Made by a program: the position numbers and the translations under genes. This document shows positions 22,861 to 44,640 of a DNA stretch of 64,000 bases, piece by piece. Within the stretch, counting starts at the first letter, position 1, and each line of letters starts with the position of its first letter. Under the pieces are notes generated by a model, which did not search any database, was not told where the DNA came from, and was given only the letters and a program-made list of their open reading frames with translations. The stretch comes from Podarcis muralis (taxonomy: Eukaryota), in the NCBI RefSeq assembly GCF_964188315.1, contig NC_135667.1:17236001-17300000 (forward strand). Reading direction: 5' to 3'.

Positions 22861-25800
22861 TCATTCTAGGCCAATCCACTTCTTCACCACGCTTAGGATA
22901 TCTCCAGCTAAAAGCAGCACCTCCTTCTCCTTGTATCTAAGGAAAGCTTCATTGGGAATGGTGGGTGAATTGTGGTAGCTGGGATACTGCGTTCTCTTGT
23001 CATCCACGCCATGCTGCCGGAGTTCCTCAATCTGATCAGGCAGCTTTTCCAACTCCTGTCCATAAGAAGCTACCTTACTAGCCAGCATTGGAAGAGTCAG
23101 ATTCCTGTCAAAGCGACCTCCCTGGTAGTATTCAACTGCTGTCAGGGCTTTCTCCACTGCCCGGTAAGTCTTGTAAAGCAGCCATTCAGTGCTACCCTGA
23201 CCAGCACTACTGGCTGCCGCCTTCAGATCACACTTGGCTTGCCTTAGCCAGCGCCTGGCCTCCTCCAAGCAGTGAAGTTTTGATTGATCCTTTGAATACT
23301 TTGGCCCTCTCTGATGGAAGGACCAGAAGTTGTAGTTGCAGTGGCCTCCTCCTCCTCCTCCACCCCATCCTCCTCCACCCCCACCCCATCTTTGCCTGGT
23401 GAATTCTGTACGCCTCTCTTGATGCTGATGAGCTTGCTGGTCCCATTCACCCCAAAATTCAGAGCTCCTCTTGTAGGAACCTCTACTTTTGGGTCCCCCT
23501 CTGGAGCCACTGGGCGTTCTATTGTTCTCCATCTCCTTGATCTTGTCTTTAAGGTATTTGAAAATTTCATTGGCAGAATCCTCTTGACCTATGTTTTTAT
23601 CTGGGTGGTAGCACAGATAGAGTCTTCTTAAAGCCTTCCTCCTCTCATCCTCTGACAAGCTCCAAATTTCAGCCAAGCAGGCATCCACTTCTTTCTTTAT
23701 CTCACTCAGTGGCCTCTCGTACCAACTGCCACTTGTAAGTGGTCTTGCAGTGCTGCTAGCACCAGGGGAGCCTTCTGCCAAGACCACAGCTTTACTCAGA
23801 TCAGATGCAGAGTTATTCCTCCGGAAATGGTAAAGGTCATAGGCGCTGACTTCTGCATGCCGCCCTCCTCCCAAGTCAACAAGGTATGTGTCTACTTGGC
23901 CAGTACCGCTCTGCCGTGGCCCAAGGGCTTCAAGGACCACAGCGTAGAGGTAATGCTCTCTGGGCTTGGAAGAATCCAGGTAACCCACGTAATCTTCTGG
24001 CAGAAAGGTATGGAGGATGCTCATGTCCAGGCTGTCATACCATTCCTCAGGGATGTCCTCTCCAGGAGAAGGCAGGATATAGGCATTTAGGTTTGCTGGC
24101 AGCTGCAAGGGCACTTTGTTTTTCTCTAGCACCTCAGCAATTTCCTTGGGCCTTTGGCGAACCAAAATCTGCTCAAGGACCATCAGGGCCTGCGAGCTAA
24201 ATCTTTGTCCTAAAAGCCTATTCAGCTCTGTGGCTAAATTGACAGAGAACTCCACACCCCACTGTGCATCTTTGCTCTCCTGGTGTGCAAGGTAAATCTG
24301 CAGTTTGCCATCTGGCATTGTTGCAACATACACTGTCCTGGCACACTGGGTTCCTTCCACACTCTGCGAATTGTGCACCATGGTTGTGCACACTTTTTCA
24401 CAACAAACCACTTCTAGCCGCTCCGGTGAGAAGCGTCCTTCAAACATGCATTCCACTTCCTCTACTTTTGTCCCACCCTGCCATTTAAGCAGTGCAACCA
24501 GAGCATGCTGGAACTCGCAAGACATGAGTAGTTCTTCTAGCCAGTTTTGGAACTCACAGTGTTCCCCATAGGTACAGAGTTTCAGAGAGGACTCTTCCAG
24601 CTGCTCTTCAGTGATATCTGACAAGTTCTTGGGGCGCAAGGCTTCAGGCAGCCGATGCAGAAGCCTCTGCTGCTTATACTTGTCGTAAGGTAGCTCACAT
24701 ATTGAGAGATCTATCAGAAAGCGAAATTTGCACTGCAAGTCCTGGGGTTCCTGGCTATACTTGTATAAACTAAAGATGAGGCTGTTTGATGGATATAGCT
24801 TCCCATCAGCACAAGGCAGATGCAGTTCTTTCAGCTCTGAGAAATCCATTTGATCCTTTGCTTCATCTAATAGCTGGAAGAGGAACTGAGTGGCCCTGAG
24901 CACTGTTTTGGTGAGGTTGGCATGCAGTGTAGCCTGCCTTACAGTCTCTGCATGAATTCTGGCCAGAACACTGGCATAGTGATGGATGCTTGCCTCATCT
25001 TCCACTCCCAGTTTCTCCAGGACATCCATATAGACCGCTAGCTTTGGTGGTAGCTTGTAAAGATACGGCCGGAAGTCCTGTGGGTATTTTAATGAGACCA
25101 CCACATTTTGGGCCTCTGCTACCTCACCGCCATCCACTAGTACCACAGGGAATCCCTTTAAGCAGCCAGTCTCTAACGTTTGCTGTCGCGACAAATAGCC
25201 ATAAGCTGACTTTAGGATATCCTCTCGAGTTTTCCTAGCTTTCGGAGTGTCACATGGTGCCTGGCATACGTTTCTTAGATTCTCCAAGACTAAATGGGCT
25301 GGCAAGGTGTGCAGCACTCCCAGTTGTTTTAGGATGGTTTCTTTATTTTCCCCAACATATAGAACAGAAGGCAGAATGACCGCTGAAGTCCACACCAGGT
25401 CTGCTTTCGCAGTTAACAAGGAACCTTGGGGTGCCACAGGAGTATTACACGGCACATATGGCGAGTGAAGGCAACACAGATCTTCAGAGATCTTCTTTGG
25501 CAATAGGAAACGGATCTTGGACACTGTTTCCAGGAAGGCCTCTGAGAAGGTTTCACTGGAAAGCAAGTAGCTCCAGAGTGCTCTCCTCCTTTCATCAAGA
25601 TCATGGGCACCATCCTTCAGTTTTCCAGCCCTCAATGCTTCTTTTGCAATTTGGTTAGCCAACACTAGAAAGTCTTCCTCAGAGATCTCTTGCCGCAAGC
25701 CCACATCAAGTAAGAACTCTTTCAACTCCCATATATTCTCTGGCCACACTGAGTCATAGAATTTGCGTGGCACGAACAGAGAATCCATTCTCAACTCCTT

Positions 25801-28800
25801 GAAACACATTTTCTCCTCATAAAAGTAGGACACAGGACGCATCACACCTTGCTTGTCCCGGATGAAGGCAAAAGACTGGAAAGTTGCCACCACTGTCTTT
25901 TTCTCGGCCTCATATTCCTCAGGATAATGCCTCTTGATAAGGAGGAGTAATCTCACAGCCTCCAGTACACGAGCTTCGAGGAGATGGGGCAGCCAAGGCA
26001 AAAGCTGCTTTACAAACTGCTGCAAATCATTCATTACACCAATACTCAAGCTCTTACTGAGATCTCGGTTCAGCCAGCTATCACTCAGCAGGACAGTCTT
26101 CTCATCTACCTCATAAAGCTCCTGGAATTTCTTGGTTTCCTTTGGAATCTTGGACTCCAAGATGTAGATATTCCCGTACGAAGACAACGAAACGTGCTTC
26201 CCTTGGTGTGTTTTAAACACGGGCAAGGATTTCAACTTGCTTAGCAATCCATGGTCATTCTTCAGCGTCTCCGGTTGGCTGCTTAGGAACTGCAACAGCG
26301 CTTCAAAGTCCCACCCTTTGAGCGCATCCCAACACAGGTCATGATGAGCTGCCAGTTGTTCGAGCACTACTGTAGGATTCTCAATCTGCAACACACATGG
26401 CAGAATGCAATGTGCAGCGAGCTTTGGAGGCAAAAGAGAGGAGTCCAACTTGGAAAAGCCCAGTTTGCAGAGAATTTCAGTAACAGTACCTGCTTGACCA
26501 GGCATTATCGTGTTGAGGGACTCAAGGGGAACCAAGAACTTAGTGCAGCCACAACACACAGGGAGCATGGCACAACCTTTGAAGAGGGAAACTAGCTCCG
26601 CAAACATATTTTTCATCGTGTCTGAATTCCCAGTCATGCAAATCTGGTTCTCAAAGAAAGCCCACAATTCACGGAGCCATTCCCGGCCTTTATCAGTACT
26701 GACCCTGTTGTCCAAAGACAGCATCTCCTTAACGAAGGCCACAGAATCAGAGAGTGTAAAATCCTTTAGAAACCCCATCTGTACTAACAGCTGCCTGGCC
26801 TTTCTATCAATTTGGCAGGCAAAGAAACAGTCTTGACGGTGTGGGAAAAGATTGTGCACACTGCTATGGTATGGAGGACACTGCTGAGTGAAGCACCTCA
26901 GCATGTTATCTTGGGTCACCAGCAAAGGGAGACCTTCCAGGCAGCTTTTGTCATCAGGAAGAAGCTCACTGAGGCAGAACTCGAGGAGAGCAGAACAGTA
27001 ACGGCTATTCTTCACAGGTGTCAGATGAAGTGGGCAGGGCAGGAGAAAGTTGGGCAGGTTCTTGAGGAAGCAGCAGAGGGAAGGAGAATCGAGGGTTAGG
27101 ATATCAACTCCTGCCTTGACAAAATGGTCGCATACCAATTGCAAATGTTGGAAGGCAGGGACAAAATTCATGCCCAGACTCTGAAGAGTAAGCTCAAGAA
27201 CCTCACTTATCTCAGACGGCAGGAAATAGGGATCATTGGTTGGGTGGCCCAGTCTGGGTGCACTCCAGTGCACACTCACTTCTTCCATCTTAACTCTATA
27301 CTTGAAATTAATCTCCTTCTGGTACACAGGGACCAAGGGAAGCTGCTCCATGTATGCCAGTTCATACAAACGGGTCACCAGCTGTTGCCATGCTGGGGGG
27401 ACATCCCTTGTCACAAATGGGAAATACTGCAAATAGTTTGATTCCAGCCACTTCTCACATTCAGTCAGGGAGTAGAACTGCAGTGTTGTATCATTCAGCG
27501 CCCGGCGCAGCTCATAAAGCAAATGGCAGTACAATGGGGCAATGAGACACTGCAGCAGCAAGTTATTCCAGGACGTATTGGCACCACCTTCACCATCATC
27601 CTTCCGCAAGCCACGGCGAGCAGAGTCCACAGCAAAGTTCCCATTGATGTGGATGGGAAGGCCTGTTTCTTCCAGAAGCGGCAGTGTGCAGAAGGCCCTA
27701 CCAGGTAGCCGTCCGTCAAAACAAGCTGCCACACCCCCACACGCCAAGTCCATATTTTGCACGGTATTGTCACTCTCAAGCCCAATCTGCCTACCTACCA
27801 GCCAGTTGCTGGAAACATTGGAGATACTACTCTTCACCTTCATTCTGTAGAAGACTCTCATTGGCTCGCCATCATCCATTCCACCTGCTGCAGCAGCCTG
27901 TTGGAGACGCTTCTGGTATTCCAGTCTTTCAGGCTCACCACCTTCAGCCTCTACCCGCAGCACCTCCTTCAGTGTCCCTCCCCTCTCACTTATTATAGAG
28001 AAGACCACGCAGCGAACGTGGTTGAGGAACATCACAAGGCTGTCGGCTTCTTCAATGAGAGCCACCACAATTTTCTTCATGTCTTGCTCGGACACAGAGC
28101 TCTGGCAGATACGGGATGAGGCTGCACCATCAGGAGTACGTAAGGGTAACCGGAAAACTGTGCCTTGTTCCAAGTTAAACACATCAGGTAAAAAGGTATT
28201 ATAAACATCACGGATGGTGTCTTTGACTTCTTTAGCAAGGTTGTACATTCTACCAGGTGAGATCTCATCAGAATCAGGGAGGTAGTGCAACATGGGGTCA
28301 AAGACGCACAGAGCACTGTCCCCCGTCACAAAGGCAGGGCAGTCAGTCAAGTGATAAACTGTATTGAAACCTAGTCCATATTTGCCGGTAGCATCTCTCC
28401 TCCCACCTTTGGCACCAGAGCCCAAGCGCTGGATCCCTTCTATGTCACACCTCTGGAAGGTGCGGTCATTGTAGATGCAAAGTGCCGGGCCTTGAAGTTC
28501 ATTCCACTCCTTGCTGAAGACGCGATCAGTCGGGTGCTGTCGCCGATCCCAGACAAAGTGGACAAGATTTGCACCAGCATCGTCTGCATTCTGCAGCAGC
28601 TCCTTTAGCACATCCTGTGAAGAGGAGTACTCACGGAGGATGTTGGCCAGCCGGGTACAGATTTCTTCCTTGGCTCCAAAATCTGTGGCCCAGGAAGAGA
28701 GACCCTGAATCCGCTGGCGTGACAAGACACGACCTTTTGTGGTCTGAATGCCACAGCGCATAGCAATTTCCCGTGGGATCATGGCATGACAGAGCAGGGT

Positions 28801-31800
28801 CCCTTTCTCATGCGGAAGCCATGGTGTGTCATCAAAGAGGAGCTTCGGCAATGGTCGAAGGACTTTGTGTTTGTCTGGGAAAAATACACTCTGGGCTTCA
28901 TAAGGACTCAACTGTTGACCCTCTGGCAGGGCCTCGGCCAGCCCTACAGTGATCAACCTGACAACTAGGTCCAGATGCCCTTTGGAAAGAGACTGTCCAG
29001 CTCCCTCCTTGGCCAAAGTCTGCAACACAGTGGCATAGTCCTTCACTTTGAAAGTCGCAGGCAACCCAACACACTCCCACAGCATCTTTTGCTTCTGGTA
29101 CTCCTGAGGCAGCTGGAAGAGATATGGAGCAGCATCAAAGAACAGGCAATGGGCCACACTGCACACTGACACAAAGCCAGTGTCCATGAAAACAAAGGGG
29201 AATGTCCTTGCCCTTTGGGACACCTCCACCTTGGACAGAGGGTTCATCTGCACTATTTCATTCAGGAACGCATAGCAGGTTTGTGCTATGTTTCCCAGCT
29301 CCATTCTGGACAGGGCATTGGAACTACATGATGCTTCCTCCAGTTGCATCAGCACTGTAGATATTGGTGGCTGATGATTCAGTCCTAGGAATTCCTTTAG
29401 CTCCATGGAGAGCTTCAAGCCTTTACCAAGGGCTGTCTTGTCCAGGACAGGCTCAGTCAAGCCTACCAGGGGGTGCAGCTTATGGCAGTAAACCTCTTTG
29501 GGGCAGCAGAGTTTGCGTTGGTTAGCAGGTAGTACTGCTGGCAAGAAGGGAATGTCTCTGAAAGTAACCTGGGTAGTGTTGCTGTAGCTTTCCTGCAGGT
29601 GGTCCTCAAGGAGCTCTAGGATGCAGCGGGCACGCTGGCAGGCCTTGACTGGGTCATGACTCCACAAGGCTGCCACAGTTCTGGCTCGGGCTATCAGTTC
29701 CTCCATTTCTACACAATCTTTGGCCATGCCAAGATGCTCCAAGCGCAACAGCCTCTCTGGTTCCAGAAACCCTGTGCCCGTGGGGAAACGGCCATCTTCA
29801 GGAGCGTAGAGAGGTGCAGCGCAGCCCCTTGGGTGTACAAGTTCTTTAATGTTTCTCAGCAAACTATTGGGGACAGTTGGAATGCAAGGCCAGGATGTCA
29901 AGATCTTATTCACGCCAGCATCATTCATATCCAGAGCACGAAGAATGAGGACATCACGATCAGGCACTGCCAGCTGAGCAAGATTGGGCAAAACAAGCTC
30001 ACAGAGGAATCGTGCCCAATTGTAGGTGTTTGGCAACAGGACGTCCTCCTGGATGCAATCTCTTAAGTTCATCTTCACCCAATCTGGAACTGACACCGCC
30101 ATCTTTGGCTCTGGCAAAAGTAAAGAGAAGACCCTGAAAGCTATAGGTTCCAGATGCTCCTGACAGGTACTGTCAGAATTGAGGAAACAGGCATCCCGGG
30201 CTGGGCACCATCGCTGTCCATCAGAAAAGAGAACTGGCTGTTCCCCATCAACACCATTGACTAAGGCTTGGTAGAAGGCCTTGACTGTTTCACTGAATGG
30301 GTGCTTGGCACTGCGCACGTCAGGCCAGAAAGCATGGTACTCATAGTCCTCCAGCAATCCTTCCTCGTACATGTCCCGGAGCAGGGACAGTGCTCCAAGC
30401 CAGGCACCCAGCACGGAATCCCGTAAGAGCGCCTTGTTCCATTTCCCCTTCTCAGTAGCTTCCCAGAGTCCTTTGCGATTACTCTGCACAGCAAAGACTG
30501 CCGTGAGATGCAACGGGAGTCCAGTTTCAATAGGAAGAGGTAGAAAGCAGAAGGCACGGCCCTTAAAACCATCTACATCTGGAACCCATTTTCCAGCAGC
30601 AGTGGCAGGGCGGAGGGGCAAAGCAACGCTAGCAACAGGAGGCGAGAAATGGACATCCTTTTCTTTTCCCTGTTTGAAGACCTGAAGGGCTTCTCCTTGA
30701 GCAGAGCAGGAGTGTAGCAGGTAATGGCTGGTGACCACACTCGACTTCCATGTTGCTGTCAACTGCACAATAGTGGACGTACCCATCCTGACAAGTGCTT
30801 TCCTGCTCACTGTGGCTAATGGCTGGTTGGTTTCTGGGGAACTGGAACCATGAGGAAGGTGGGTCAGTGACACCTCCTGCACTTTTCTCAGGAAGATCAG
30901 CAGATACTTGTACATCTCCCGGAAACCAATTTGCAAGGATTTGATTCGACTGGGTCCAAACGGATCACAGCAGATCTGAGAGTCCTCTGCCTCCTCCTCA
31001 GTGCGGAAGGGCAGGCGGAGGAGCGTGCCTTGGTAATCATCTCCAGGTTGACAGCCAAAGATTCCTCTGAACGGTCGAAATTGTTCAGGAAATCCAGCGG
31101 CGACTTTTCGGTTCAATGTGAGACGCATGCCTGGTTGGCCTGAATTACGGATATGCTTCCGAAGGTGGGTGATGTTTGGGTCAAAGATGAGCATGGTGTG
31201 GCCACTGAGAAGAGAGGGCACATCAGTGATGTGGTAGACAGTGCAGAAGCCCAGCCCAAAGCGACCAATCTTGTCATCCTGCCGTTCCTTGGTAGCTGCA
31301 CCTAGACGGATGATGTTGGAGAAATCTGTCTCGGTGAAGAATGCATCATTCTGGGCCCAAAGTGCGGGGCCCTGGCAGGCAGCCATGCCCGGGTCCAGGA
31401 GTCCTTCAGTGGTACCGTTATGCTCACGGAGATCGACTAGGAAGCGGCAAGTTTGGGCGCCAGCATCCTCAGCATTTTGCAGCAGTTCCAGGAACACATC
31501 TGCATCCTGGCTGTATTCACGAAGGATGTTACGGATCCGGAGGGTGATTGGCTCCGAAGGACCCCACGCCTGAGCCTCCAACACTTCCAAGCCTGAAAAC
31601 CGTGTGCTTAGCATTTCCACACCATGGAAGGTAGCAGTGGCAGAGGAAACAGATTCATGCACCAAAGTAGGTGGGTCGCCATCCAGCTCAGCAAGGTGTG
31701 CCCGATCCATGTCACAGTACAGCACAAAACTGGCCGGGCGTAGAACAAAACCGGACAGTCCTTGAATCCGCACAGGCACTGGCATTTCCCTTTCTCCATG

Positions 31801-33662
31801 GTAGCCACGAGCGCACAGCCAGTCCAGGACAGCTATCACGAGGAGCAGTTCAGCATGCATGCCGCCTTGTGGTCGGGCATTGATTTGATCTGCCAACTTC
31901 TGCATTGCTTGGCACACTTCCTCCTCTTTTGGTAACTTATGGACCCCCCATGCTGCAAACAGCTGGCTGTAACCTTGGAAGTCCAGAGGCACTCGTGAAA
32001 TCAGGGCTGTAAGGTCTAAGCCATCAGGGTAGGCCAGCACCACATCTGCAGCCAATGAGAAGCCAGTCCCATTCCACACCATAGGTCCCACAGGTGGCTT
32101 CTGGAAGTCCCTCAGGTGCTGTTGCATGTGCCGATAGATGCTGTGCAGCTTTGTAGTTAACACAAAGGCCTCCTCAGGGTGACATCCCTGTGCCAAGGCA
32201 GCTAGATTCTCCATCACTTTCTCTGGTGGAGGAGCGTTCTCCAGACCCAGTTCTTTTGCAGCTTCTGGCTGAAAAGCATTAGTCAGTCCCATGACCAGCC
32301 CGACAAGAGCAGCGTACCTCTCTGAGCGAAGCAGTTCAGGTGCCAAGAAATCTCCAGCTGCCGCCAATGTGGAAGCGTTGGTGGCAGGCACCCAAGGCAG
32401 GGACCGCAGCAGCTTCAGCTCCTGCGAGGAGAAGCGTGAGAGTAGAGGAGTCTCATTGCAGACCCGGATGAGTGCCCGTGATTTGGCACTGGCATCTGCA
32501 GCCTCTTGCAGTTGACCAACTTCCTCCGCAGCCATCAATGCATCTGCTGGACAGACAGCACTGAGATCAGATTTCAGGCCCAGAACACGAAGGGTTCGCA
32601 GTGCTGCTGGCTCCCGGAAGGGCCCTGTGGGGAAGCGGCAAGGTCCCAATAAGTCCTGCAAAGTGCGATTCTCTGGATCATAGAGATCACTGGGCCTGGC
32701 CAACCTTCCTGATCCGCAATCCAGGAATGGCAGCTCACGACACAAAGTTTGCAGCTCTCGGGTCTGGCTGAAGAGGGAGTCCCCATTGTGCAGCACCCAC
32801 AGCATGAGCCGCTTGGCTTCCTGTGCCCAACTGGCATATGCCCCCTGCATCATCGCCTTGATGCACAGCAGGCACAGATCTGGCGTCCCCAGGAGCTTCT
32901 GCCCGATTAGCAAGAGCAGGTGGCGTTCAGCTTCATTATGACACAACAGTACAGGCTCTGGAGTTAGCAGATCCGAGGGCACTGGTGGAACCAAGTTCTT
33001 CTCTAAAGCCAGGTGGTGCTGGGCTGGCACCAAGCCAGACCTGGTGGGTGGAAGGAGGGAGGGCATCTTGAAGAAGAGCGGCAACTCAGTTAGGACTTCG
33101 GCTTCTTTGGGGGAAAGCGACACAGCCGTGGAGAAAAAAGCACTCAGGCTCTTGATCTGGCAGGTGGGCAGAGATGCAACGCGACCAGCCACGGATGCCA
33201 CCCCTAAATGGGCAAAGACCTGCAAGACACTCCCAGCCGTGGGTTCTAGGACGTACTCTCTCAGCTGGCGGTGGCACCATTCTGGCTGCCAGCTCCGGAC
33301 CACAGTGCATCCCAGTCTCTCCAGAATGCCAGCCACTTCGTCCGGCAGACAACGCCCCTCGTGGCTCTGGAACAGCAGAGTAGGCTGAGGCAGCAGCCGT
33401 GCCAATTGGATTCCACTGTGGGAGTTCTGTAGAGGAGTCAGCGGTATCAGGGGGCATCCCTTGAAGGGTGCCAGGGAGGGAGCATGGCGACTCAGGAAAC
33501 TCCAGAAAGCAGAAAGCCACTCAAGCGGGGGCTGTTTTGGGTACTCCTTTGGGCACCAAGATACAGGAGCAGGGTTGCTGCTGACCCAGTCCTTAGGGAG
33601 AGATTCACGAAGGTTCTGCTCAATGACATTTTGATCCATGGAGACAAAGTTCCTGAATAACC
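22861..33662 (-). CDS. Sacsin-like protein, giant last coding exon (10,802 nt): end of SRR1, SRR2, SRR3, SH3-like region, J-domain, HEPN
   Basis: Open frame with ELLQNAEDAGA...KIGRFGLGF (SRR2), [11 protein letters not shown]...TGKYGLGFNTVY (SRR3), LRRLYLCYHPDKN (J-domain HPD, 23599-23607) and EARRWLRQAK...(HEPN). Acceptor (TC)n-ATATTCAG|GG at 33663/33662, phase 1. Confidence 0.96.
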
Positions 33663-33666
33663 CTGA

Positions 33667-33710
<44 letters not shown>

Positions 33711-34668
33711 CAACCACCATTTGTGTGCACTTGCATTTCCTGTTGGGAGCAAAGTGGCAATGTATACACTACTTCTATGCCCAGCACTGAAAAGTACTTT
33801 GGATGCAACTGAACTCCAATATGTATAGGTCTGTGAATGATTTGGTATCACAATGATGCTAGAGCACTGCTGAAGCAAAGTGAGCCTGAAACTGATCAGC
33901 GTACCAAAAACCAGTGTGGTGTAGTGATTACAGCAGGCAGATGCAAACTGTGGCCCATCAGATATTGCTGAACTACAACTCCCATCATCCCAGGCCATTG
34001 GCCATGATTAAGGGAGCTGGTGAAAGTTGTAGTTCATCAACATCGAGAGGGCCAAATGTTGCCTGCCCCTGGATTAGAAAATAAGACTAAGGCAAAGGGG
34101 GGACAACCTTCAGCCCTTGCCCTAATTTCATGCAGGTGGTGGAGGACGACCCAACAGAGAATGATGGAAGGGTGGCGGAATCCACTGCAAGCAATCAGAT
34201 CAGACCTTTGACAAGAGTGATCCATCTCTACTGGTGGCTGGGGGGAAATGTTCCCCAACCCTGTGCTTAAGGGTTAAAATGCCCAAACTAGCTGTGAAGT
34301 TAATTTGTTTACTTGGAGACAGCCACTCTACTGCTATTTGGTGTCACGCTCACTATCTTTCCACCTAATCTATTTTACAGTGTTGCTGGGAGGAGAAAAT
34401 GGCGCCTGTGTGTAAAAAGCATGTGTTTGTACATGGTAGAACATTTACACTGGTGGCAGCCAGCCTGGTGCCCTGTGGATGCTGTGGATTACCATCCCCA
34501 TAATCTCTGACCGTTGGCCATGCTGGCTGAGGCTGAAGGAAGTTGAAGTCTAGCATGGCTAGTGAAAATAGGAGTTGTAGTCTAACAGCATCTTAAGAAC
34601 ACCAGGGTGGGGAACCCGTAAAACACCAGAAGCTGATCATGGTGCGCTCAGGAAACTGAAAGTCTCAC

Positions 34669-34757
34669 CCTTTTCTGCAATTGTTTGCAGATGCTTCAGC
34701 AGCTCAGGGTTTAGATCCTTGGGCAAGAACCGGTGAGCCAGGCCAGGCAACAGGATC
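34669..34757 (-). CDS. Sacsin-like coding exon (89 nt)
   Basis: TTTTGCAG|G...AAGG|GTGAGA; encodes (R)ILLPGLAHRFLPKDLNPELLKHLQTIAEK(G), homologous to the short human SACS exon before the giant exon. Phase 2 to phase 1 bridges the flanking exons exactly. Confidence 0.9.
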
Positions 34758-35238: not shown

Positions 35239-36673
35239 CTGGGGAAGTTGTGGTTATCGAGGAAGACCGTCTCTCCAGAATCTCCAAAGCAGGTAAAGTT
35301 TCCATTGGCTGTCGGCAGCAGTGGCAGATTCTTCAGCTCCTGGTAACACCCATCTCCAACCAAGTACTCCAACAGCAACTGTTTCTCTGTCAAGGATATC
35401 CCATGCCACACACTGGTAGTCTGTTGCAGGGTCTCCCTGACAAACTTCGGTGTGGCCTCTTGCACCGCTGCCCTGCCTTTGGCACCCCACACCAAAGCTC
35501 GGCGCACATGGAGCGGAGCAGCAGCAAGTGGTGATTCTGCCAAAATGAGGGCCTTCTCCAGGGCCTTCTCTACTGGTTTACCACTCACTATCTCTGGCAA
35601 GATCACGGCTTTGCAGGGGTGGAGCAAACGAGGTTCCCCATCCCCGACTCGTACCAAGAGTTTCATGTCCATCAGTGTCTGGCATATCTGAACCACTAAA
35701 GGCTTGTATCGTAGTTGTTGGCTTTGGTCTGGGTCTGGCCATGCCCCATATGGGTTGTCCGGACAGGTAGATGCCAGCAGTACCATTTGGCAATAAGCAA
35801 CAGGCAACATCTCCTCCATAAGCAAGTGGTTCCATTGACCGTCGGCTCCCCTCGCCTGGGACCCCTCTTCAGACCACTGCACGTGTCTTCGGTCATCTGT
35901 CAGCTGGAAGGGGGCACTGATGTGCAGTGGCAATCCAGTGGTGTTTTCCTCTGTGGCCGGGAGCGGCAAGACGCAGCTGAGGCGTCCCATGCACTTATCT
36001 TGCAAACAGTAAGCCAAGGACAACACAGGCTTAGAGCTGACCTTCACTGCGAGATCCCACAGTTCTGGGAAGGCATCCTTTTTCGCTTCAGCAGACAACA
36101 CAAGCCAGTTGCACTTGCTGGCCTGTCCAGTCCCAGTGCCACATAGAGTAAGTGTTTTGATGTGGACACCCATGTCCAGTTTAGTGCCCATAGCATCATC
36201 AACAAGGTTTGCCTTTCCACTACTGCATTCTGCAACTTCCAGCACACCTTGGCTCATGCCCAACCCATTAAATGGGCGAGTGGTGGCCTCAGCCTTCAGC
36301 ATCTCACGGATGGCACCATCGGACTCAATGAGACCCAACGTCAGTTTCTTGATGTTCCTGAGGAACAGCAAACTAATGGGGGCATCATTCACGAACGAGA
36401 GCAGCAGTTTCTGCACCCGTTCTGGACTGTAGAGATTTTCTGAGATCTTCGATGGACTCTGTCGTAGCGGGAAGCGAAACAGGGTGCCTGGAAAGCGGCC
36501 CTCCGCAGTTGGGCAAGGCTGGCCCAGAGACTTCAGTGCTGCCCAGAATGGTTGGAACTGGTCGGATGCCTCTTCCCATTCACTCACCTCCCAGAGCTGA
36601 CCCCCGTCATGTAATGCCATCTGCTGTGGGTCCAGCACCCCCAAACATACATCAGAAAGTATAGATGGGAAAT
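35239..36673 (-). CDS. Sacsin-like coding exon (1,435 nt), SRR1 body
   Basis: TATTTAG|AT...CCCAG|GTGAGC; (D)FPSILSDVCLGVLDPQQ...FPGTLFRFPLR...LPLHISAPFQLTDDRR...DNHNFP(R). Confidence 0.93.
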
Positions 36674-37087
36674 CTAAATAGAGTGAAGGGAAGGAATTCA
36701 GCCATTAAAATGTGGTTGCCCCAGACTTGGTTCCTTTCCCCCCTTCATGCTATTTCAATTAATCTTTATCTCTCTCAATTTCCCCCATCTCAATGATGGC
36801 ATTAGGCATATTTCGCTGGGGAGAGCATTCTACAAATGGGGAGCCACTGTTGAGAAAGCCCATTCTCCCATTCCCTCCCCCTCAGAAGAAGTACACAGAC
36901 AAAGGTCTCTGAGGATGATTGCAGGGCCCAGGTATGCCGATGTGAGGAGAGAGAGGTGGTCCCTGAGGTCTTGGGGTCCTGAGCTGTCTTCTAGTCCTTT
37001 TCCCTATAATTCTTATGCCTTCCTCCCAAAGACATCTCGTTTTGAAGACTGACAATCTCCCAAATTGAGCCAGGCAGAACTTCTCAC

Positions 37088-37234
37088 CTGTGATATGGTA
37101 AACTGAATTGAAGCCCAAGCCAAAGCGTCCAACTGTAGAAGGGTCATCCTCCTTGTGACTGATGCCTGGACTCTGGATCCCTTCCCAGTCAGCCTCAGAG
37201 AATAGACCGTTGTTATAGGCAAGAAGTGCAGGGC
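37088..37234 (-). CDS. Sacsin-like coding exon (147 nt), SRR1 ATP-lid region
   Basis: TTTTTCAG|GC...CACAG|GTGAGA; [49 protein letters not shown](D). Confidence 0.93.
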
Positions 37235-38183: not shown

Positions 38184-38295
38184 CTTGGGTGCTTGCCAGC
38201 CCCTCTGAGAAAAGGCTCTGGGTTCCAAAACTCCGTGCATCATAGAGCAAGATCACCTCTTCAGCCCCCGCATCATCTGCATTTTGGATCAGCTC
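38184..38295 (-). CDS. Sacsin-like coding exon (112 nt), SRR1 GHKL N-box
   Basis: CTTCCTCAAG|GAG...CCAAG|GTATGG; [37 protein letters not shown](G). Confidence 0.93.
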
Positions 38296-38840
38296 CTTGA
38301 GGAAGAAGAGAATGAGAGTAGGAATAAATGCCAGGGGTCAACACAGACACAACTGTGGAAATTGCTACATGGATGCCAGCCCCACATTCCATAAACTGCT
38401 AGACATATACAGGGGTCGTCAATATCACCCCTTTCAAACTTTACCTATTTAGAAAAGGGAGGGCAAGCCATCTCCTTGCTGCTGTGTCTGTCCCGCATCT
38501 GTAAAGGCTGGGAGACCTGGCAGGCTTCTTTGCTGCAAATCTGCACCTTCTTTAATATTGCACTAGAACTGGCCATTCTGATGTTTTTGACATCCTTCTT
38601 TGGTACCCCTGCACCCAGCCACTCCCACAAGCCGTCCTTTGGGCCTGCGCTCCAGAACAGCTTCCTGCTCTAAACTTGCAGTCTTACTTCTCTTCCCCCA
38701 AAATCCGGGTGTTTGGCTGCCTCCTCTCTGTGAACACGCAAGTTGTTCAAGCCCTACTTAAAATGCAGTCCATGTGAAATGGCTTCGCTCTCAAAAACGG
38801 CAAATGCAAAAAGCCCAGGCCCAATGCTTAAAAAACTTAC

Positions 38841-38928
38841 TTTTAAGATCTGACCCCCATCTGGGTACTTGCGGAGGATACCCTGCAAGTATTTGAGGAC
38901 AGGAGGTGATTTTTGTCGAAAGCCCTTC
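38841..38928 (-). CDS. Sacsin-like coding exon (88 nt)
   Basis: CTTTCTTTCAG|G...TTAAAA|GTAAGT; (R)KGFRQKSPPVLKYLQGILRKYPDGGQILK, like human [27 protein letters not shown]. Confidence 0.9.
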
Positions 38929-39100
38929 CTGAAAGAAAGGCAGGCGGTTACAGTAGTTAGAGTATATGAATATATAGAGTATATGAACAGAGAGACTTCA
39001 ATCTAAGCAGGACCAGGCTGTGGGGTGGGGTGGTGCTCCTGGGCAACCTTGACCTCACTGCCGACCTGCCCAACCCTTGCACTGCCCAAGTAAACTGTAG

Positions 39101-39672
39101 CAATGGTGTAGCAAGAGGGGTTGCCCACACCAGCCACTCCTAGATTTCAGTCTGGAGTAGGGAATTTTTTTTGGCCTGAGAGTCCAGGGGCGGAGGAAGG
39201 GGGGCTGGTGGGGGCGGTCCGCCCCAGGTGTCATCACTGAGGGGGTTGATGTTCGGCACACTGCCCGCCCGCAACTCCCAAGCACATCCCAAGCTGTCGG
39301 GGGAAGGGGCAGAGCTGCGCCGCCTTGCCAGCGGCCTTCCCCCCTTCCCCCTTCGTTTTGACAGCTCGAAGGAGGCTTGGGAGTTGCGGATGATCAGCTC
39401 GCCATTGCCCCCCCCCCCCGCCTCCTTTGGGGGGGAGCCTCTCCTGAGCTGTCAAAAGGAAGAGGGAAGGGAGGAAGGCTGCTGGCAAAGCGGCGTGGCT
39501 CCCTCCCTGCCCAGGAAGCAACCTGCCATGGGTGGCTTGCTTTGCCCCCCTAGGTGTCTCGCCCCCTGGGACGCTTGGCGCAGGCGGCGCCCCCCCCGGG
39601 ACACTCGCCCTGCCCCCTGGGTGCACAACATGTGCGCAGCTTCTGGTGCCGCAGCAGCTAGCTCCACCTCTG
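39101..39672. mobile_element. Old GC-rich hAT-like non-autonomous element with an internal inverted repeat
   Basis: Imperfect TIRs CAATGGTGTAGCAAG / GCTAGCTCCACCTCTG; internal TTTTGACAGCTC ... GAGCTGTCAAAA. No clear TSD. Confidence 0.4.
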
Positions 39673-40427
39673 TGAGCCGCATTCCCAGTCGTGTGTGTAG
39701 CCACCAAATGCACAATAATACAAGCATACACAGGTGCACATGCATATACAGAGAGACAGAGAGATGTATTAACATGCACAGCAACTGGGGTTGAAAAAAG
39801 CCTTCTAACTTTTAGCAAGCCTAATTGCCAGGAGAGAGAAAGAGATGAGATTCCTGGAAATCTCAGCTGAGAAGAGAGATGGGTTAACCCTTCCCTCTCC
39901 AACTGCACTCTTCCCGAAGATCATCCTTCTCATACAAACATTATGGCAAAAGAAGACTTCTTTGAAAAGACATTGTGGAGGGTTTACAAGTGAGGAGAGA
40001 AAAAATCACGCTTCTGGACCCAGCTGCAAACCCACCACCCTAAAAACAACACAACCCAATTGAGCTTGGGGAAAAGCTTACTGTTGGCTACAATAGAAGG
40101 CCTTTGCAACCCTAAGTTTAGCAGGGATGAGAAAGACTATACACAGAATAAGGAGGCAACTGGCCCATGGTCCAAAGGTTCCTAACTCCTAGTTTAAATC
40201 CTCACTCTGCTGTTGGGTCTGTGTGCAGGTTTCCCTCCTGAGTGACACTGCATTGTTGTGGCATCTGCCGGGACAATTTAGTATTCAAAGGACCCTGGGC
40301 TGCCACTACTGACCCAGCTTGGTTATTGGATCCTACTGGCCAGCAAAAACTGTAAGTGAACTTCTTGTTCCAGGTAAGCTTGTTCAAGGCTTGTCTCCCT
40401 GACACCTCGAGTATTATTATTATTATT

Positions 40428-40653
40428 CAGTGGTACCTCGGGTTAAGTACTTAATTCGTTCTGGAGGTCCTTTCTTAACCTGAAACTGTTCTTAACCTGA
40501 AGCACCACTTTAGCTAATGGGGCCTCCTGCTGCTGCTGCGCTGCCGGAGCACGATTTCTGTTCTCAACCTGAAGCAAAGTTCTTAACCCAAGGTACTATT
40601 TCTGGGTTAGCGGAGTCTGTAACCTGAAGCATATGTAACCCAAGGTACCACTG
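40428..40653. mobile_element. Tc1/pogo-type MITE (family of 5122 and 20018)
   Basis: CAGTGGTACCTCGGGTTAAGTAC ... TAACCCAAGGTACCACTG|TA. Confidence 0.85.
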
Positions 40654-40911
40654 TACCCTATACCCAGAGGTCTGTAGCCTTTTGTTCCTAACTTGCTTCT
40701 TCATCCTGCCTCCTCATTTAACTTTTGGTTCTCACTACAAGCTCTCACCCCAGTCTGCTGCCCACAGCCTAACCCTCAGGGCCACAGGGCTCACTGGGTG
40801 ACCTTGGGCCAGTTCTTCACACACTTGGTCTAGCTCTGAGCTCCTTGGAGGAAGAGTCAGCAATGTTTTAAGCAAGTGGTGTTATCAGATCCCAGATAGT
40901 TTTGGTTCTGA

Positions 40912-41115
40912 GTAAACATCAGGAAGAACTTTCCGGTGGTAAGAGCTGTTTGACATTGGAACAGTCTCTCTTGGGAGGTTGTGGAGTCTCCTTCCTTGGA
41001 GGTTTTTAATCAGAGTTGGACGGCCACCTGTCATGGATGCCTTAGCTGAGATCCCTGCATGGCAGGGGGTTGGACTAGATGACCCTTTAGGTCCCTTTCA
41101 ACTCTACAGTTCTAG
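40912..41115 (+). mobile_element. CR1 LINE 3' fragment
   Basis: AACATCAGGAAGAACTT...GTGGAGTCTCCTTCCTTGGAGGTTTTT...GGTTGGACTAGATGACCC...TTCAACTCTACAGTTCTA, a typical CR1 3' end. Confidence 0.8.
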
Positions 41116-41197
41116 GATCAGCACATCCAGCACAGTCTCACTGGCATTTTTTTGTCCATGAGAAATCCCATGGATACACACACACACCATTTCTTAC

Positions 41198-41220
41198 CTC
41201 TTCTTCGGCCCCTGAGACAT
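41198..41220 (-). CDS. Sacsin-like first coding micro-exon (exon 41198-41228), MSQGPKK(R)
   Basis: CACTTTTGCAG|GTATCAACATGTCTCAGGGGCCGAAGAAGAG|GTAAGA; phase 2 matches the next exon. Joined CDS is 12,696 nt (4231 aa plus stop). Confidence 0.8.
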
Positions 41221-42139
41221 GTTGATACCTGCAAAAGTGAGGAGAAAAATGCAGAATGAGGAAAAAAATGGAGTGTATAATCTCACCAATACAATTTGCA
41301 CATTGGCCCCCACTGGACAAAAAAAGAGCTCATAAACTATTGTTCCTTCCGTAAATGGACAGTTTTTAACAAAACAGACAAGAGGAATCACTTACCATGA
41401 TGTTACAAACACCCCCCCCCCCAGTCATCTCTCATCAAAGGGATTTTGGAACAATAGAAAACCCTGCCAGGCTGCAGTTTGTTATGTGTGCTGGAAACTG
41501 TAGTTTATGTGAGGAAGAAACTACAGTTCCCAGGATTCTTTGGGGAAAACCAGGTGCTTTAAATGTATGGTAAGGATGTGATTTCAGTTACCAAAGGCAA
41601 AAGCAAACAGTCCAAGCCTGCCACAAGCAGTGTGGCATCTTTCTCTGTCCTCCGCTTCCGATCCAAAACACGTTTACTAAATTATTATTACTGTAACATA
41701 AAATTTGTATGCCGCTCTGTACCTGCAGGTCTCAGGGCAGTTCACAGGATAAAATCACAATATAAAAACACAAAGTACATAATCAAAATCAAAACAAAAC
41801 CCAATAACCCCCCACAACACATTTTAAAATTATGTAAGTCCTTTTAAGCCATTGAGGCCAACTCATTTAAGTGAGCTTACGTAAGCTTACTTGTGATTGA
41901 CTTGTGATCTGGAATGTGCTTTTGTAGCCAGTAGACTGTGCAACAATTCCATGAGGTGGACAGGAAAGGTGGCCGATATTTATTTAAACCACTATTTTGC
42001 CAGATATACATTTAAACCACTATTATACTATTTTAACAGTCATGGCTTCCCCCCAAAATTCCTGGAAACTGTAGTTGGTTAAGGGTCAGTTCATCTTTTA
42101 TTCATTTTCTTATGCAGGCATACAACCTTTTTACTATTT

Positions 42140-42710
42140 ATTATAGTTATTGTTTATTAAATTAAAACCTTTGACACCAAAAACATTCCAAAGATTACAA
42201 AATAAAATAAACCTACAAAAAATAAACTAGACAGTGTATACAAAGAATCAAGCCTGCACTGTTCTTTTCCTGAGAGTATGTTGCCTTTGAACAAATAAAA
42301 GTTACATAATCCTGATATTTCTAAAGACCAGTGGCATAGGTTTCATACCACCTTTCTTGTGTACGTAATAAAAGGCCACCAAAAATCTCTCTTTTTTTTT
42401 TACCCTCGGCCAAACGTATCCTTAGCAATACGTCAATTAACATGATTTCCCATGTGGTGTTGTACTATTTTGCTGTGTTTAACTCTTGTAAGTCCCTCCC
42501 CCTCCAAATCTCGCCACTGAGATTCTTGGAGCTCCACCAAGAACTTGTTTATGTAAGCTTTTCTGATTTCCCCCTGTAATCAGAATCCCTTCCCTGCCCC
42601 CCCCACCCCGGTGACAATTACTGTTGAGGTTTCATTAAAAATCTTTCCCCAAAATTTGGCAACATACAATCCCACCACATATAAGATCCAACTCCCCAAC
42701 AGCCCCTCCA
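42140..42710 (-). mobile_element. Degraded L1-type LINE 3' fragment (Cys-knuckle region)
   Basis: Minus translation near 42640-42710 gives CWRGCWGVGSYMWWDC..NF, resembling the CWRC...HxWWxC..FW motif of L1 ORF2; T-rich tail downstream. Confidence 0.5.
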
Positions 42711-44368
42711 GCAGAACTTTTTAATTTTTTTTTTAATTGTTACAACCTAAAAGGTGTTAAAAATCACTTCTGCGTATTTTGAAGTGATGTTTCCCTAAAT
42801 TATACTGAAGTATTATTGTATGGGAACTTTCCTCCCAAGACTTTCCACTATTCACCTCCTAATATTCCTGTCTTTTCTCGTGTTTCTCAGTCCAGCTGCA
42901 TTTTGCATAACCTAGCAGAGTGGACCCTACTAATAATTTATCAAATATCCCTGCATCATTTCAAACTACAGACCCAACTGCAAACTTGTTCAGCTCTCCT
43001 AATTTTAAAGGGAGCACTTTGGAAGAATGGATCACAAACACGTTAAGGGGAAGAGACACATCCCCTGGTCATCACAGGCCACTGAGGTTATTTGGTTCAC
43101 TCCTTTTCAGCCATCAAGACAGCCAAGCACATAACAAACAACACATTTGCAGAGCCAGAACACAATGGAAGCACATGATCTGTTACAACTATTGCAGAAT
43201 CATCATTTCCGGAGAAATTTTTGTGTTTCCTAACAAGAGTTGATAAGAGAGGATGTGCTCTGACTGAAACCTTTTTTTCAGCCCAAAGTCCACATTGTGG
43301 GCATGGCAAGAAGCAAAAAGTGGACAGAGAAATGGGTGTGCCTCTTACCCTCATCAAGAAGAAAACATCCCAGTAAACTCAACACTAGAGGTTTCTAGAT
43401 GGGCACAAACTTATACATCTATGCAAACAAAAGGCATTATCAAAAATGTTCAAGGACACCTTCCAAGCCAGCCAAAAACAATGGAAGAGGATGCAGAGCC
43501 CAGATGGTGTCTGGGGGTGAGTGTCAAGAAAGCAAAAGGGAAGGGGTTTACATCTGTAGATTCCCAACTGCAGTTTTATAGGAATTGCTTGGGTACCAGA
43601 ACAGTGGGGCTGCTCACTTGCCACCTCACATTCTTCAGCCTTTCTTTTAATTGCTATATGCAGGGAAACGAAATTCATTCAAGTGACAAGGCCTTCCCTG
43701 ATTATCACTGCATCCAGACAGTAGGGAAAGTTTCGCCTTTTGAATGCCTGCCAGCCGGGCCAACTAGAGGCAGGAGGTTCCCCAGAATGAAAAACGGTGA
43801 TAATTTCACGCTGTACATTTTAGATTATAGCCATATTTGTACTGTACTTCTACTGCACATAAGCCAAGTCTACACTAGGAGAACGAGGTCTAAGAGCCCA
43901 GCACTGCACCATTTTAGTCGACAAGGCAGGGAACACGTTTTAACTTTCCCTCCAAGTTTTATAAAAAGAAAAGGCAGGTTCCCTGCAAGTAGAAATTAGC
44001 GCGATAGGAACAAGGCTGAGCTATATATTTTTCTCCCCCCCCCCCCCCGAAGTATTAGCTTTTTGCTTCTGCGGGGAATTTGCTAGGTGAGGAAAACCTC
44101 AAAAGCGATGGCTCACAGACGCCAATCTCTCAGCCTGGCCTGTTGGGAGGATAAAATGCGAAAGAGGCACCTTGCGCTCTTTGAAAGAAAGGTGGGCTTA
44201 GAAGTGTCTGTATTAACTAAGCAAATGTGTTTAGGATCAGAGCATTTCGCTGTGTTTCCAGAGACGCTCGTACTTCTTCTAAGCCTGTTTAAACCCCGTT
44301 ACTCCTCCCAAAGAACCCAGGAGTCCTGCTGAATCGGTCCCCATCACCTGCTGTCTGTTATTACTCAC

Positions 44369-44640
44369 CGCGTCTCTCGGAAGATGCAGGTGCGAAGATC
44401 CCCGCGCAGCTTCCCGGCCGACGATGACTAAAGAGCAAAAAAGGTCCGCCGCCCTACCTCGCCTCAAGGCGGATGCCCGGGGAAGCAGCGGCGGCTGCGC
44501 TTTAAAGATGCCAGTCGCTTTCGATTCCGGCGAAATGGAAACCGAAAGCAATTTCGCTCCGTTTGGGAAAGAGGCGGGGAATGTCTCGGAGCTGAGGAGT
44601 GGGACGGGCACTTTTAGAGGGGGATGTGGGGCAAAGACGG
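44369..44640 (-). promoter_or_regulatory. CpG-island promoter and non-coding exon 1 of the sacsin-like gene
   Basis: Strong donor GCG|GTGAGT at 44369/44368, no ATG in the presumed exon, TTTAAA at 44501-44506, GC box GAGGCGGGG at 44571-44579. TSS position inferred. Confidence 0.7.
44532..44548. promoter_or_regulatory. ISRE / IRF-binding element, three GAAA half-sites
   Basis: GAAA-TG-GAAA-CC-GAAA-G, fitting (GAAANN)n; similar to the ISG15-type GGAAACCGAAA core. Confidence 0.75.

What the first reader, a model, noticed from the sequence alone, without database searches (positions are those of the whole stretch)
22861..44475. Complete 4231-aa sacsin paralogue lacking the N-terminal ubiquitin-like domain
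Seen: seven coding exons (23, 88, 112, 147, 1435, 89 and 10,802 nt) splice in frame with GT-AG sites and no stops. All three SRRs keep the GHKL E-x-x-Q-N-A-x-D box and the G-x-(F/Y)-G-L-G-F lid, the J-domain keeps HPD, and a HEPN domain ends the protein. Known from memory: human SACS has matching exons of 112, 147, about 1489 and 92 nt before its giant exon, begins with a UbL domain and lies beside SGCG. Inference: an ancient intron-retaining duplicate, not a retrocopy and not the SACS orthologue, that has lost the proteasome-linking UbL and is probably functionally uncharacterised.
Basis: partly seen in the sequence, partly recalled or inferred. Interest (0 to 1): 0.75.

Follow-up and report, generated by a model that had tools for sequence, protein, structure and literature searches.

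The report
Annotated lizard sacsin-like gene, ancient paralogue
This is the wall lizard's intact copy of "sacsin-like", a second, fast-evolving giant sacsin gene that most non-mammalian vertebrates carry beside the ataxia gene SACS; it is already in public annotation, so the gene is ordinary, but its history is poorly described.

Summary
Seven GT-AG coding exons (23, 88, 112, 147, 1435, 89, 10,802 nt) on the minus strand give a 4231-aa protein. [quoted passage not shown] The first coding exon lies at 41220-41198, not near 44475.

All 4231 residues equal RefSeq XP_028607501.2, "sacsin-like [Podarcis muralis]", so the gene is already annotated.

The same species has true SACS (4591 aa, with a UbL) on another chromosome, beside a sarcoglycan gene. 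The two proteins are about 35% identical.

A 51-protein tree gives two fully supported vertebrate clades. One is SACS with cyclostomes. The other is sacsin-like, from sharks to squamates. Five introns share position and phase, so this is an ancient DNA-level duplicate, not a retrocopy.

The claim that the UbL was lost is not supported. Amphioxus, hemichordate and echinoderm sacsins also lack a UbL, so it was more probably gained on the SACS branch.

Sacsin-like evolves much faster than SACS (70% versus 93% identity, Podarcis to Pogona; dN/dS 0.39). It keeps an invariant Q-x4-H in HEPN and has a conserved ISRE-like promoter element.

A virus- or interferon-induced role is inferred, not shown. 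This scan had already noted that promoter element (s1-179024) and true SACS elsewhere in the genome (s1-152654).

The parts
41198..41220 (-). Coding exon 1 (23 nt, ATG; MSQGPKK plus 2 nt). It is preceded by a polypyrimidine tract and a CAG acceptor 9 nt upstream of the ATG.
38841..38928 (-). Coding exon 2 (88 nt), the start of the SRR1 ATPase domain. It corresponds to the 86-nt exon of true SACS.
38184..38295 (-). Coding exon 3 (112 nt), carrying the GHKL N-box ELIQNADD. True SACS has an exon of the same size and phase.
37088..37234 (-). Coding exon 4 (147 nt), carrying the lid GRFGLGF. True SACS has an exon of the same size and phase.
35239..36673 (-). Coding exon 5 (1435 nt): the rest of the SRR1 ATPase domain and the SRR1 body.
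34669..34757 (-). Coding exon 6 (89 nt).
22861..33662 (-). Giant coding exon 7 (10,802 nt including the TGA stop at 22861-22863).
30766..31494 (-). SRR2 Hsp90-like/GHKL ATPase domain (Pfam SACS; N-box at residue 1357, lid at 1431).
27937..28668 (-). SRR3 Hsp90-like/GHKL ATPase domain (approximate bounds; N-box at residue 2319, lid at 2391).
23461..23652 (-). J domain with HPD at residue 3984.
22873..23202 (-). C-terminal HEPN domain. The motif is K-R-T-Q-Y-P-S-Y-H: the canonical Arg position holds Gln, and the His is kept.
44458..44560 (-). Putative promoter and non-coding 5' exon (unverified). It holds the ISRE-like core GCTTTCGGTTTCCATTTC, and a GT donor follows 44458.
   Evidence: earlier finding s1-179024
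13653..15095 (-). Downstream neighbour: a 480-aa C2H2 zinc-finger gene. It lies in the same relative position next to sacsin-like in Lacerta agilis and Anolis sagrei.

Best explanation
The locus is the Podarcis muralis orthologue of vertebrate 'sacsin-like', an intact and expressed-looking gene that is already in RefSeq.

Shown here:
- It descends from a DNA-level duplication of the ancestral sacsin gene in the vertebrate stem.
- Its sister gene is SACS, which carries an N-terminal UbL.
- It is under purifying selection but evolves several times faster than SACS.

Inferred mechanism, about 45% likely:
- It is a virus- or interferon-induced giant co-chaperone and nucleic-acid-binding protein.
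- The three ATPase modules and the J domain engage Hsp70 and client or viral assemblies.
- The HEPN domain, which has an invariant Q-x4-H rather than the catalytic R-x4-6-H, binds RNA or nucleotide rather than acting as a canonical RNase.
For: Identity: all exon translations and split codons equal P0413, XP_028607501.2.

Orthologues are named sacsin-like in squamates (61-92% identity), turtles (52%), birds (43-44%) and amphibians (37-42%). Shark and teleost relatives score 33-37%.

Paralogy:
- Podarcis SACS (P0396, 4591 aa) has a ubiquitin hit of 32.6 bits, above the 25.4 cut-off.
- It lies beside a Sarcoglycan_1 gene on OZ076957.1.
- It is 30-35% identical to sacsin-like.
- PDB 'Lizard sacsin' 5v47 and the human chain score about equally against SRR1 of the window, at an identity I put at roughly half by eye, while the two are nearly identical to each other.

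Tree: the sacsin-like clade has support 100, SACS plus cyclostomes 100, and vertebrates against four invertebrate outgroups 100.

Introns: the last five have phases 0, 1, 1, 2, 1 in both genes.

No UbL in the window: the best profile hit has E=3.6, against 7e-22 and 1e-8 at the SACS locus used as control.

Outgroups lack a UbL.

Selection: dN/dS is 0.39 overall and 0.10-0.17 over the ATPase heads. Motifs are kept throughout the clade.

Immune lead:
- The ISRE-like core is conserved in Lacerta and Anolis.
- Lumpfish sacs-like is induced by poly(I:C) while sacs is repressed (PMC11357929).
- 'SACS' is a core virus-responsive gene in fish (PMC8875540, PMC3534563).
- SACS-type ATPases occur in the bacterial Tiamat defence system (bioRxiv 10.64898/2026.09.30.755639).
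Against: - The runs that hold the giant exon are only guessed to be RNA.
- I did not establish which clade the virus-induced fish 'sacs' transcripts belong to. NCBI names are inconsistent: zebrafish and Chanos 'sacsin' of about 4250 aa fall in the sacsin-like clade.
- The tree used a quick search with LG+G4 and no mixture model, and the tool warns about long branches.
- The canonical HEPN Arg is missing, so an RNase role is doubtful.
- The Pfam DnaJ score (20.4 bits) is below its cut-off of 27.8.
Confidence: 0.8

Rival explanations
1. The UbL was present in the pre-duplication vertebrate gene and was later lost in the sacsin-like lineage.
For: Both genes descend from one ancestor. The intron just upstream of the 86/88-nt exon differs in phase between the two genes, phase 1 against phase 2. 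That difference is compatible with a remodelled 5' end.
Against: Amphioxus, hemichordate and sea-urchin sacsins begin directly with SRR1 and give no ubiquitin hit. No sacsin-like N-terminus examined has a UbL: 22 were read from sharks to lizards, and 10 were scanned against Pfam. This reading needs two events (a gain and a loss) instead of one. Anantharaman et al. 2013 (PMC3710099) also describe the UbL as a fusion specific to vertebrates.
Confidence: 0.2
2. Sacsin-like is a constitutive proteostasis co-chaperone, a tissue-partitioned version of the SACS function, and has no special link to immunity.
For: It has the same SRR-J-HEPN core as SACS, with the ATPase boxes and HPD kept. It is under purifying selection.
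Against: - It evolves three to five times faster than SACS at the protein level.
- No mammal appears among 120 named relatives.
- The promoter element is ISRE-like and conserved.
- A fish paralogue is induced by poly(I:C) (PMC11357929).
- Bird copies appear to lack the J domain, which argues against a strict Hsp70 co-chaperone role.
Confidence: 0.3
3. The locus is the true SACS orthologue with a mis-modelled or missing N-terminus.
For: The domain order is the same as in SACS apart from the UbL.
Against: - It is 35% identical to SACS of the same species, whereas SACS is 88-94% conserved across the reptiles and birds compared.
- A separate SACS gene lies beside a sarcoglycan gene.
- The tree separates the two clades.
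- No UbL-like reading frame exists anywhere in the window.
Confidence: 0.01
4. The locus is a decaying or non-functional duplicate, or a retrocopy.
For: None was found beyond the relaxed dN/dS in parts of SRR3, where one 200-codon window reaches 1.17.
Against: - The 12.7-kb reading frame is open across seven exons.
- Six introns are present, five at positions and phases shared with SACS.
- dN/dS is 0.39 overall and 0.10-0.17 in the ATPase heads.
- Orthologues of similar length exist from sharks to birds.
Confidence: 0.01

Closest known systems
RefSeq 'sacsin-like' of Podarcis muralis (XP_028607501.2) and its orthologues in lacertids (Zootoca, Lacerta, P. raffonei, P. lilfordi)
   Same: It is identical in all 4231 residues. 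The lacertid orthologues fall in one 90% cluster.
   Different: Nothing differs.
SACS (sacsin, the ARSACS gene), for example Podarcis muralis XP_028582158.2
   Same: Both have three SRR modules with GHKL boxes, a J domain with HPD, a C-terminal HEPN domain, a giant last exon, and five shared intron positions and phases.
   Different: - Sacsin-like has no UbL.
- It is 360 aa shorter.
- The two are about 35% identical.
- They lie on different chromosomes with different neighbours.
- Sacsin-like evolves much faster.
- HEPN reads Q-YPxY-H in sacsin-like and R-YPDL-L in SACS, and the helix motif EKAL is kept in sacsin-like but not in SACS.
Invertebrate deuterostome sacsins (amphioxus XP_019622025.1, hemichordate, echinoderm)
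   Same: The architecture is the same and lacks a UbL: SRR1 starts within the first 13-67 residues, and J and HEPN lie at the C-terminus. The HEPN helix motif EKAL is shared.
   Different: Amphioxus keeps the canonical R-x4-H. The sacsin-like clade has Gln at the Arg position. Identity is about 33-35%.
Fish virus-responsive 'sacs' and 'sacs-like' genes (Atlantic cod, lumpfish, sea bass and others)
   Same: Teleost proteins of about 4250-4290 aa named sacsin or sacsin-like fall in the same clade as the lizard gene and lack a UbL.
   Different: I did not map the published transcripts to a clade. Induction has been measured in fish only (PMC11357929, PMC3534563, PMC8875540).

Membership tests
Sacsin family (SRR-J-HEPN giant proteins) | Three sacsin repeating regions, each headed by an Hsp90-like GHKL ATPase domain | tested here: met
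   Pfam SACS PF25794 gives three stretches at 762 bits. The N-box and lid motifs occur three times each.
Sacsin family (SRR-J-HEPN giant proteins) | J domain with an HPD tripeptide | tested here: met
   HPD lies at residue 3984. PDB 1iur (sacsin J domain) matches at E=6e-14. The Pfam DnaJ score of 20.4 bits is below its cut-off.
Sacsin family (SRR-J-HEPN giant proteins) | C-terminal HEPN domain | tested here: met
   PF05168 scores 43.5 bits against a cut-off of 22. PDB 3o10 matches at E=2e-20.
SACS orthologue group (ARSACS gene) | N-terminal ubiquitin-like domain | tested here: not met
   P0413 gives no PF00240 hit, while Podarcis SACS scores 32.6 bits. A UbL profile finds nothing in the window (best E=3.6) but finds the SACS locus at 7e-22.
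SACS orthologue group (ARSACS gene) | Falls in the SACS clade and shows high identity to SACS of other vertebrates | tested here: not met
   The tree places it in the other clade with support 100. It is 35% identical to SACS of the same species.
SACS orthologue group (ARSACS gene) | Lies next to the sarcoglycan gene SGCG | tested here: not met
   The neighbours in the window are C2H2 zinc-finger genes. The Sarcoglycan_1 gene lies beside true SACS in L001.
Vertebrate sacsin-like clade | Groups with named sacsin-like proteins, and SRR1 starts within about 20 residues of the N-terminus | tested here: met
Vertebrate sacsin-like clade | HEPN signature T-Q-Y-P-x-(Y/H/F)-H | tested here: met
   The signature is invariant in all 24 clade members aligned, and the lizard reads TQYPSYH.
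Catalytic HEPN ribonucleases | Conserved R-x4-6-H active-site motif | tested here: not met
   The canonical Arg position is Gln in every sacsin-like protein aligned, and the His is kept. The Arg two residues upstream in Podarcis (giving R-x6-H) is lacertid-specific.
Interferon-stimulated genes | ISRE in the promoter | tested here: inconclusive
   An ISRE-like core GCTTTCGGTTTCCATTTC lies upstream of the putative first exon and is conserved in Lacerta agilis and Anolis sagrei. The strict consensus GAAANNGAAACT is absent from the window. The transcription start site is unverified.
Interferon-stimulated genes | Induced by interferon or virus | not testable with these tools
Only fish literature is available (PMC11357929, PMC3534563).
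Processed retrocopy | Intronless copy of the parent mRNA | tested here: not met
   There are six introns, and five are at SACS positions and phases.

The most novel reading that the evidence does not exclude
Sacsin-like, not SACS, would represent the ancestral, immunity-linked form of sacsin. On this reading it is an interferon- or virus-induced giant ATPase-J-HEPN protein kept from sharks to birds and lost in mammals. SACS would be the derived neuronal copy that gained a UbL. The 'SACS' reported as a core antiviral-response gene in fish would then be this paralogue rather than the ataxia gene.
Probability: 0.4. Interest if true: 0.6.

Novelty: already known. Interest (0 to 1): 0.3.

Why it matters
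The gene itself is in public annotation, so it is not a discovery. Three points are not described in the papers I could search.

- Vertebrates have two ancient sacsin lineages.
- The UbL-less lineage has the same domain layout as invertebrate sacsins and keeps HEPN features that SACS has lost.
- No mammalian member was seen.

These points matter to two fields. Fish immunology treats virus-induced 'SACS' as the ataxia gene. ARSACS research lacks a natural comparison for what the UbL and the altered HEPN domain added. A tested antiviral role would also link animal sacsins to the bacterial SACS-ATPase defence system Tiamat.

Tried and rejected
- **Joining exons.** Exons were searched by reference, and the identical database protein P0413 stood in for the full length.
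- **Strict ISRE consensus.** A search for GAAANNGAAACT gave no match.
- **Neighbouring ORFs.** A Pfam scan gave only zinc fingers and a reverse-transcriptase fragment, with no SGCG.
- **Shark 'sacsin' as a source of true SACS.** I rejected this after reading the shark N-termini, which lack a UbL. True SACS was reached through the hagfish representative instead.
- **Human SACS.** The human cluster (P0305) came back and was left out of all alignments and trees.
- **XPC-binding domain.** Pfam detected it in neither paralogue, so it could not be compared.
- **Literature on the paralogy.** Searches for sacsin with paralog, ohnolog or 'lost in mammals' found no paper describing it.
Full report
**What is in the sequence**

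The minus strand carries an open frame of 3619 codons at 22861-33720. The frame stays open upstream to an acceptor at 33662 that follows a long CT tract.

I used the Zootoca orthologue as a guide and read the splice sites directly. This gave seven coding exons:

| Exon | Coordinates | Length (nt) |
|---|---|---|
| E1 | 41220-41198 | 23 |
| E2 | 38928-38841 | 88 |
| E3 | 38295-38184 | 112 |
| E4 | 37234-37088 | 147 |
| E5 | 36673-35239 | 1435 |
| E6 | 34757-34669 | 89 |
| E7 | 33662-22861 | 10,802 |

All introns are GT-AG and no exon has an in-frame stop. The total is 12,696 nt, or 4231 codons plus TGA.

At 44475 there is no ATG. The first coding exon is the only ATG-plus-20-nt-plus-GT candidate that resembles orthologues. 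It sits nine bases after a strong polypyrimidine/CAG acceptor, with no upstream in-frame ATG. The stretch around 44458-44520 is probably a non-coding first exon, but I could not verify that.

**Domains and motifs**

- Pfam finds three SACS (Hsp90-like ATPase) domains and a HEPN domain above threshold. DnaJ is found below threshold.
- Solved sacsin fragments match: the SRR1 head (5v44, 5v47), the J domain (1iur, 6e-14) and HEPN (3o10, 2e-20).
- The GHKL N-box E-x-x-Q-N-A-x-D lies at residues 38, 1357 and 2319.
- The lid G-x-(F/Y)-G-L-G-F lies at residues 110, 1431 and 2391.
- HPD lies at residue 3984.

**Identity**

The word search returned more than 100 proteins named 'sacsin-like'. The best was Zootoca vivipara at 92%.

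The cluster of that hit contains XP_028607501.2, 'sacsin-like [Podarcis muralis]', 4231 aa. Every complete codon of every exon (4226 of 4226) and all five split codons equal that protein.

The identical database protein P0413 served as the full-length reference.

**Not the SACS orthologue**

- The same cluster look-up shows a separate 'sacsin isoform X1 [Podarcis muralis]' of 4591 aa (P0396).
- Its locus (L001; OZ076957.1, a different and larger chromosome) is followed by a Sarcoglycan_1 gene on the other strand.
- The window's neighbours are C2H2 zinc-finger genes.
- The downstream 480-aa zinc-finger gene lies in the same place next to sacsin-like in Lacerta agilis and Anolis sagrei.
- P0396 has a ubiquitin-family hit above threshold at residues 28-80. 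P0413 has none.
- The two proteins are 30% identical by BLASTP over 2829 residues and 35% in a global alignment.

**Age of the duplication**

I reached true SACS through the representative search. Its hagfish member pulled out SACS from lamprey to mammals.

I built a tree of 51 proteins: 27 sacsin-like, 18 gnathostome SACS, 2 cyclostome and 4 invertebrate deuterostome. The human cluster was left out. The tree used 4219 columns and an IQ-TREE quick search with LG+G4. It gives:

- a sacsin-like clade (sharks, gar, teleosts, lungfish, amphibians, turtles, birds, squamates) at support 100;
- a SACS clade that includes hagfish and lamprey at support 100;
- both clades together, to the exclusion of amphioxus, hemichordate and echinoderms, at support 100.

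Several species appear in both clades: Pristiophorus, Lepisosteus, Chanos, Protopterus, Pleurodeles, Pelodytes, Discoglossus, Pogona, Sphaerodactylus and Podarcis.

The duplication is therefore at least as old as jawed vertebrates. Because cyclostome genes group with SACS, it is probably older. It is compatible with the early vertebrate genome duplications, but I did not test that.

Caveats: the search was quick, no mixture model was used, and the tool flags long branches.

**DNA-level duplicate**

I mapped P0396 onto L001.

| Gene | Coding exon lengths (nt) |
|---|---|
| SACS | 38, 151, 88, 86, 112, 147, 1483, 92, 11,579 |
| Sacsin-like | 23, 88, 112, 147, 1435, 89, 10,802 |

The last five introns have the same phases (0, 1, 1, 2, 1) in both genes. 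They flank the same motifs: the 112-nt exon starts at ELIQNA in both.

The three 5' SACS exons (38, 151 and 88 nt) encode the UbL. In sacsin-like, a 23-nt start exon stands in their place.

**Was the UbL lost?**

No UbL-like coding sequence exists in the window.

- tblastn with eight SACS N-termini gave nothing better than E of about 0.07, on the wrong strand.
- A profile built from 25 SACS N-termini scored E=3.6 at best in the window. It scored 7e-22, 1e-8 and 4e-4 on the SACS locus used as a positive control.
- Places 42710-42745 were left out of both scans.

Amphioxus, hemichordate and sea-urchin sacsins start directly with SRR1 and give no ubiquitin hit. Lamprey and hagfish SACS give weak ubiquitin hits.

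One gain on the SACS stem explains this pattern. This agrees with the description of the UbL as a vertebrate-specific fusion in PMC3710099.

**How it evolves**

| Podarcis compared with | Sacsin-like identity | SACS identity |
|---|---|---|
| Pogona | 69.8% | 92.9% |
| Turtle | 53.8% | 88.4% |
| Pleurodeles | 44.2% | 80.0% |
| Shark | 40.2% | 71.2% |

For the giant exon, Podarcis against Lacerta agilis gives dN 0.035, dS 0.091 and dN/dS 0.39. The lowest values (0.10-0.17) fall over the SRR2 and SRR3 ATPase heads. The highest fall in the SRR3 body. The gene is functional and constrained, but loosely.

**HEPN**

I aligned 40 C-termini.

- Amphioxus has the canonical R-YPNL-H.
- SACS has R-YPDL-L, so the His is lost.
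- Every sacsin-like protein has Q-YPx(Y/H/F)-H, so the Arg is replaced and the His kept.
- The Arg in the lacertid 'KRTQYPSYH' is lineage-specific.
- Sacsin-like and the outgroups share the helix motif (A/V)EKAL, which SACS has changed.

The domain is therefore conserved but not a canonical HEPN RNase. RNA or nucleotide binding is the safer guess. The isolated HEPN domain of human SACSIN is reported to bind RNA (title of PMC13669270, seen in the listing; the paper itself was not read).

**Function (inferred)**

The evidence for an immune link is indirect:

- The ISRE-like core upstream of the putative first exon was noted by this scan (s1-179024). It is conserved in Lacerta (91% over 211 nt) and stands as an isolated 30-nt island in Anolis sagrei.
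- Lumpfish sacs-like is induced by poly(I:C), while its paralogue is repressed (PMC11357929).
- 'SACS' is induced 10-17-fold in cod spleen and is listed as a core virus-responsive gene in fish (PMC3534563, PMC8875540).
- The gene evolves fast.
- No mammal or crocodilian appears among 120 named relatives or among the representatives I could name.
- SACS-type ATPases occur in the bacterial defence protein Tiamat (bioRxiv 10.64898/2026.09.30.755639).

I put about 45% on an interferon- or virus-induced role and about 30% on a plain constitutive chaperone role. Expression itself rests only on contig sets guessed to be RNA that hold 66-78% of the giant exon's words.

**Verdict**

It is already annotated, and the 'lost UbL' reading should be turned round. 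Novelty of the object is nil. The evolutionary framing and the possible immune role are modestly interesting.

Noticed in passing
P0039 and P0070 (bird sacsin-like), compared with window 23461-23652: Bird sacsin-like proteins are about 250 aa shorter and have no HPD. Nothing in them aligns to the lizard J domain, although their HEPN domain aligns at 38% identity. Birds may have lost the J domain.
   Followed up: partly
window 44519-44560; L002 about 6050; L003 about 4176: The ISRE-like core GCTTTCGGTTTCCATTTC upstream of the putative first exon is conserved in Lacerta agilis. In Anolis sagrei it is an isolated conserved island. This is the subject of earlier finding s1-179024.
   Followed up: partly
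window 13653-15095 (-) and 55401-56525 (+): C2H2 zinc-finger genes flank the sacsin-like gene. The 480-aa one downstream is syntenic in Lacerta agilis and Anolis sagrei.
   Followed up: partly
window 45555-46394 (-): A reverse-transcriptase fragment (Pfam RVT_1, E=9e-7), probably a retroelement relic, lies about 1 kb upstream of the putative promoter.
   Followed up: no
window 33663-33710 (-): A long (CT)n microsatellite forms the polypyrimidine tract just upstream of the acceptor of the giant exon.
   Followed up: no
P0413 residues 4058-4071 (window about 23390-23431, minus strand): A glycine run, GGGGGGWGGGGGGG, lies in the linker between the J and HEPN domains. I did not check whether it is specific to lacertids.
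   Followed up: no
P0114, P0127, P0123, P0300 (database names): NCBI names are inconsistent. Zebrafish and Chanos 'sacsin' of about 4250-4277 aa fall in the sacsin-like clade. A 4595-aa Salvelinus 'sacsin-like' came up among the true SACS hits. Chanos has at least two sacsin-like-type genes, so teleosts expanded this clade.
   Followed up: partly
P0412 and P0408 (Podarcis lilfordi): One P. lilfordi model carries a 48-aa N-terminal extension that reads through the acceptor upstream of the ATG. It has no UbL similarity. A second model (3587 aa) starts inside the giant exon. Both look like annotation artefacts.
   Followed up: partly
P0418: A tilapia sacsin-like fragment is also filed in NCBI nr under Mustela putorius furo. 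This is probably a mislabelled or contaminated record.
   Followed up: no
L001 23012-24564: In true SACS of Podarcis, the UbL is encoded by three small exons (38, 151 and 88 nt) spread over about 14.5 kb upstream of the shared exon set.
   Followed up: yes
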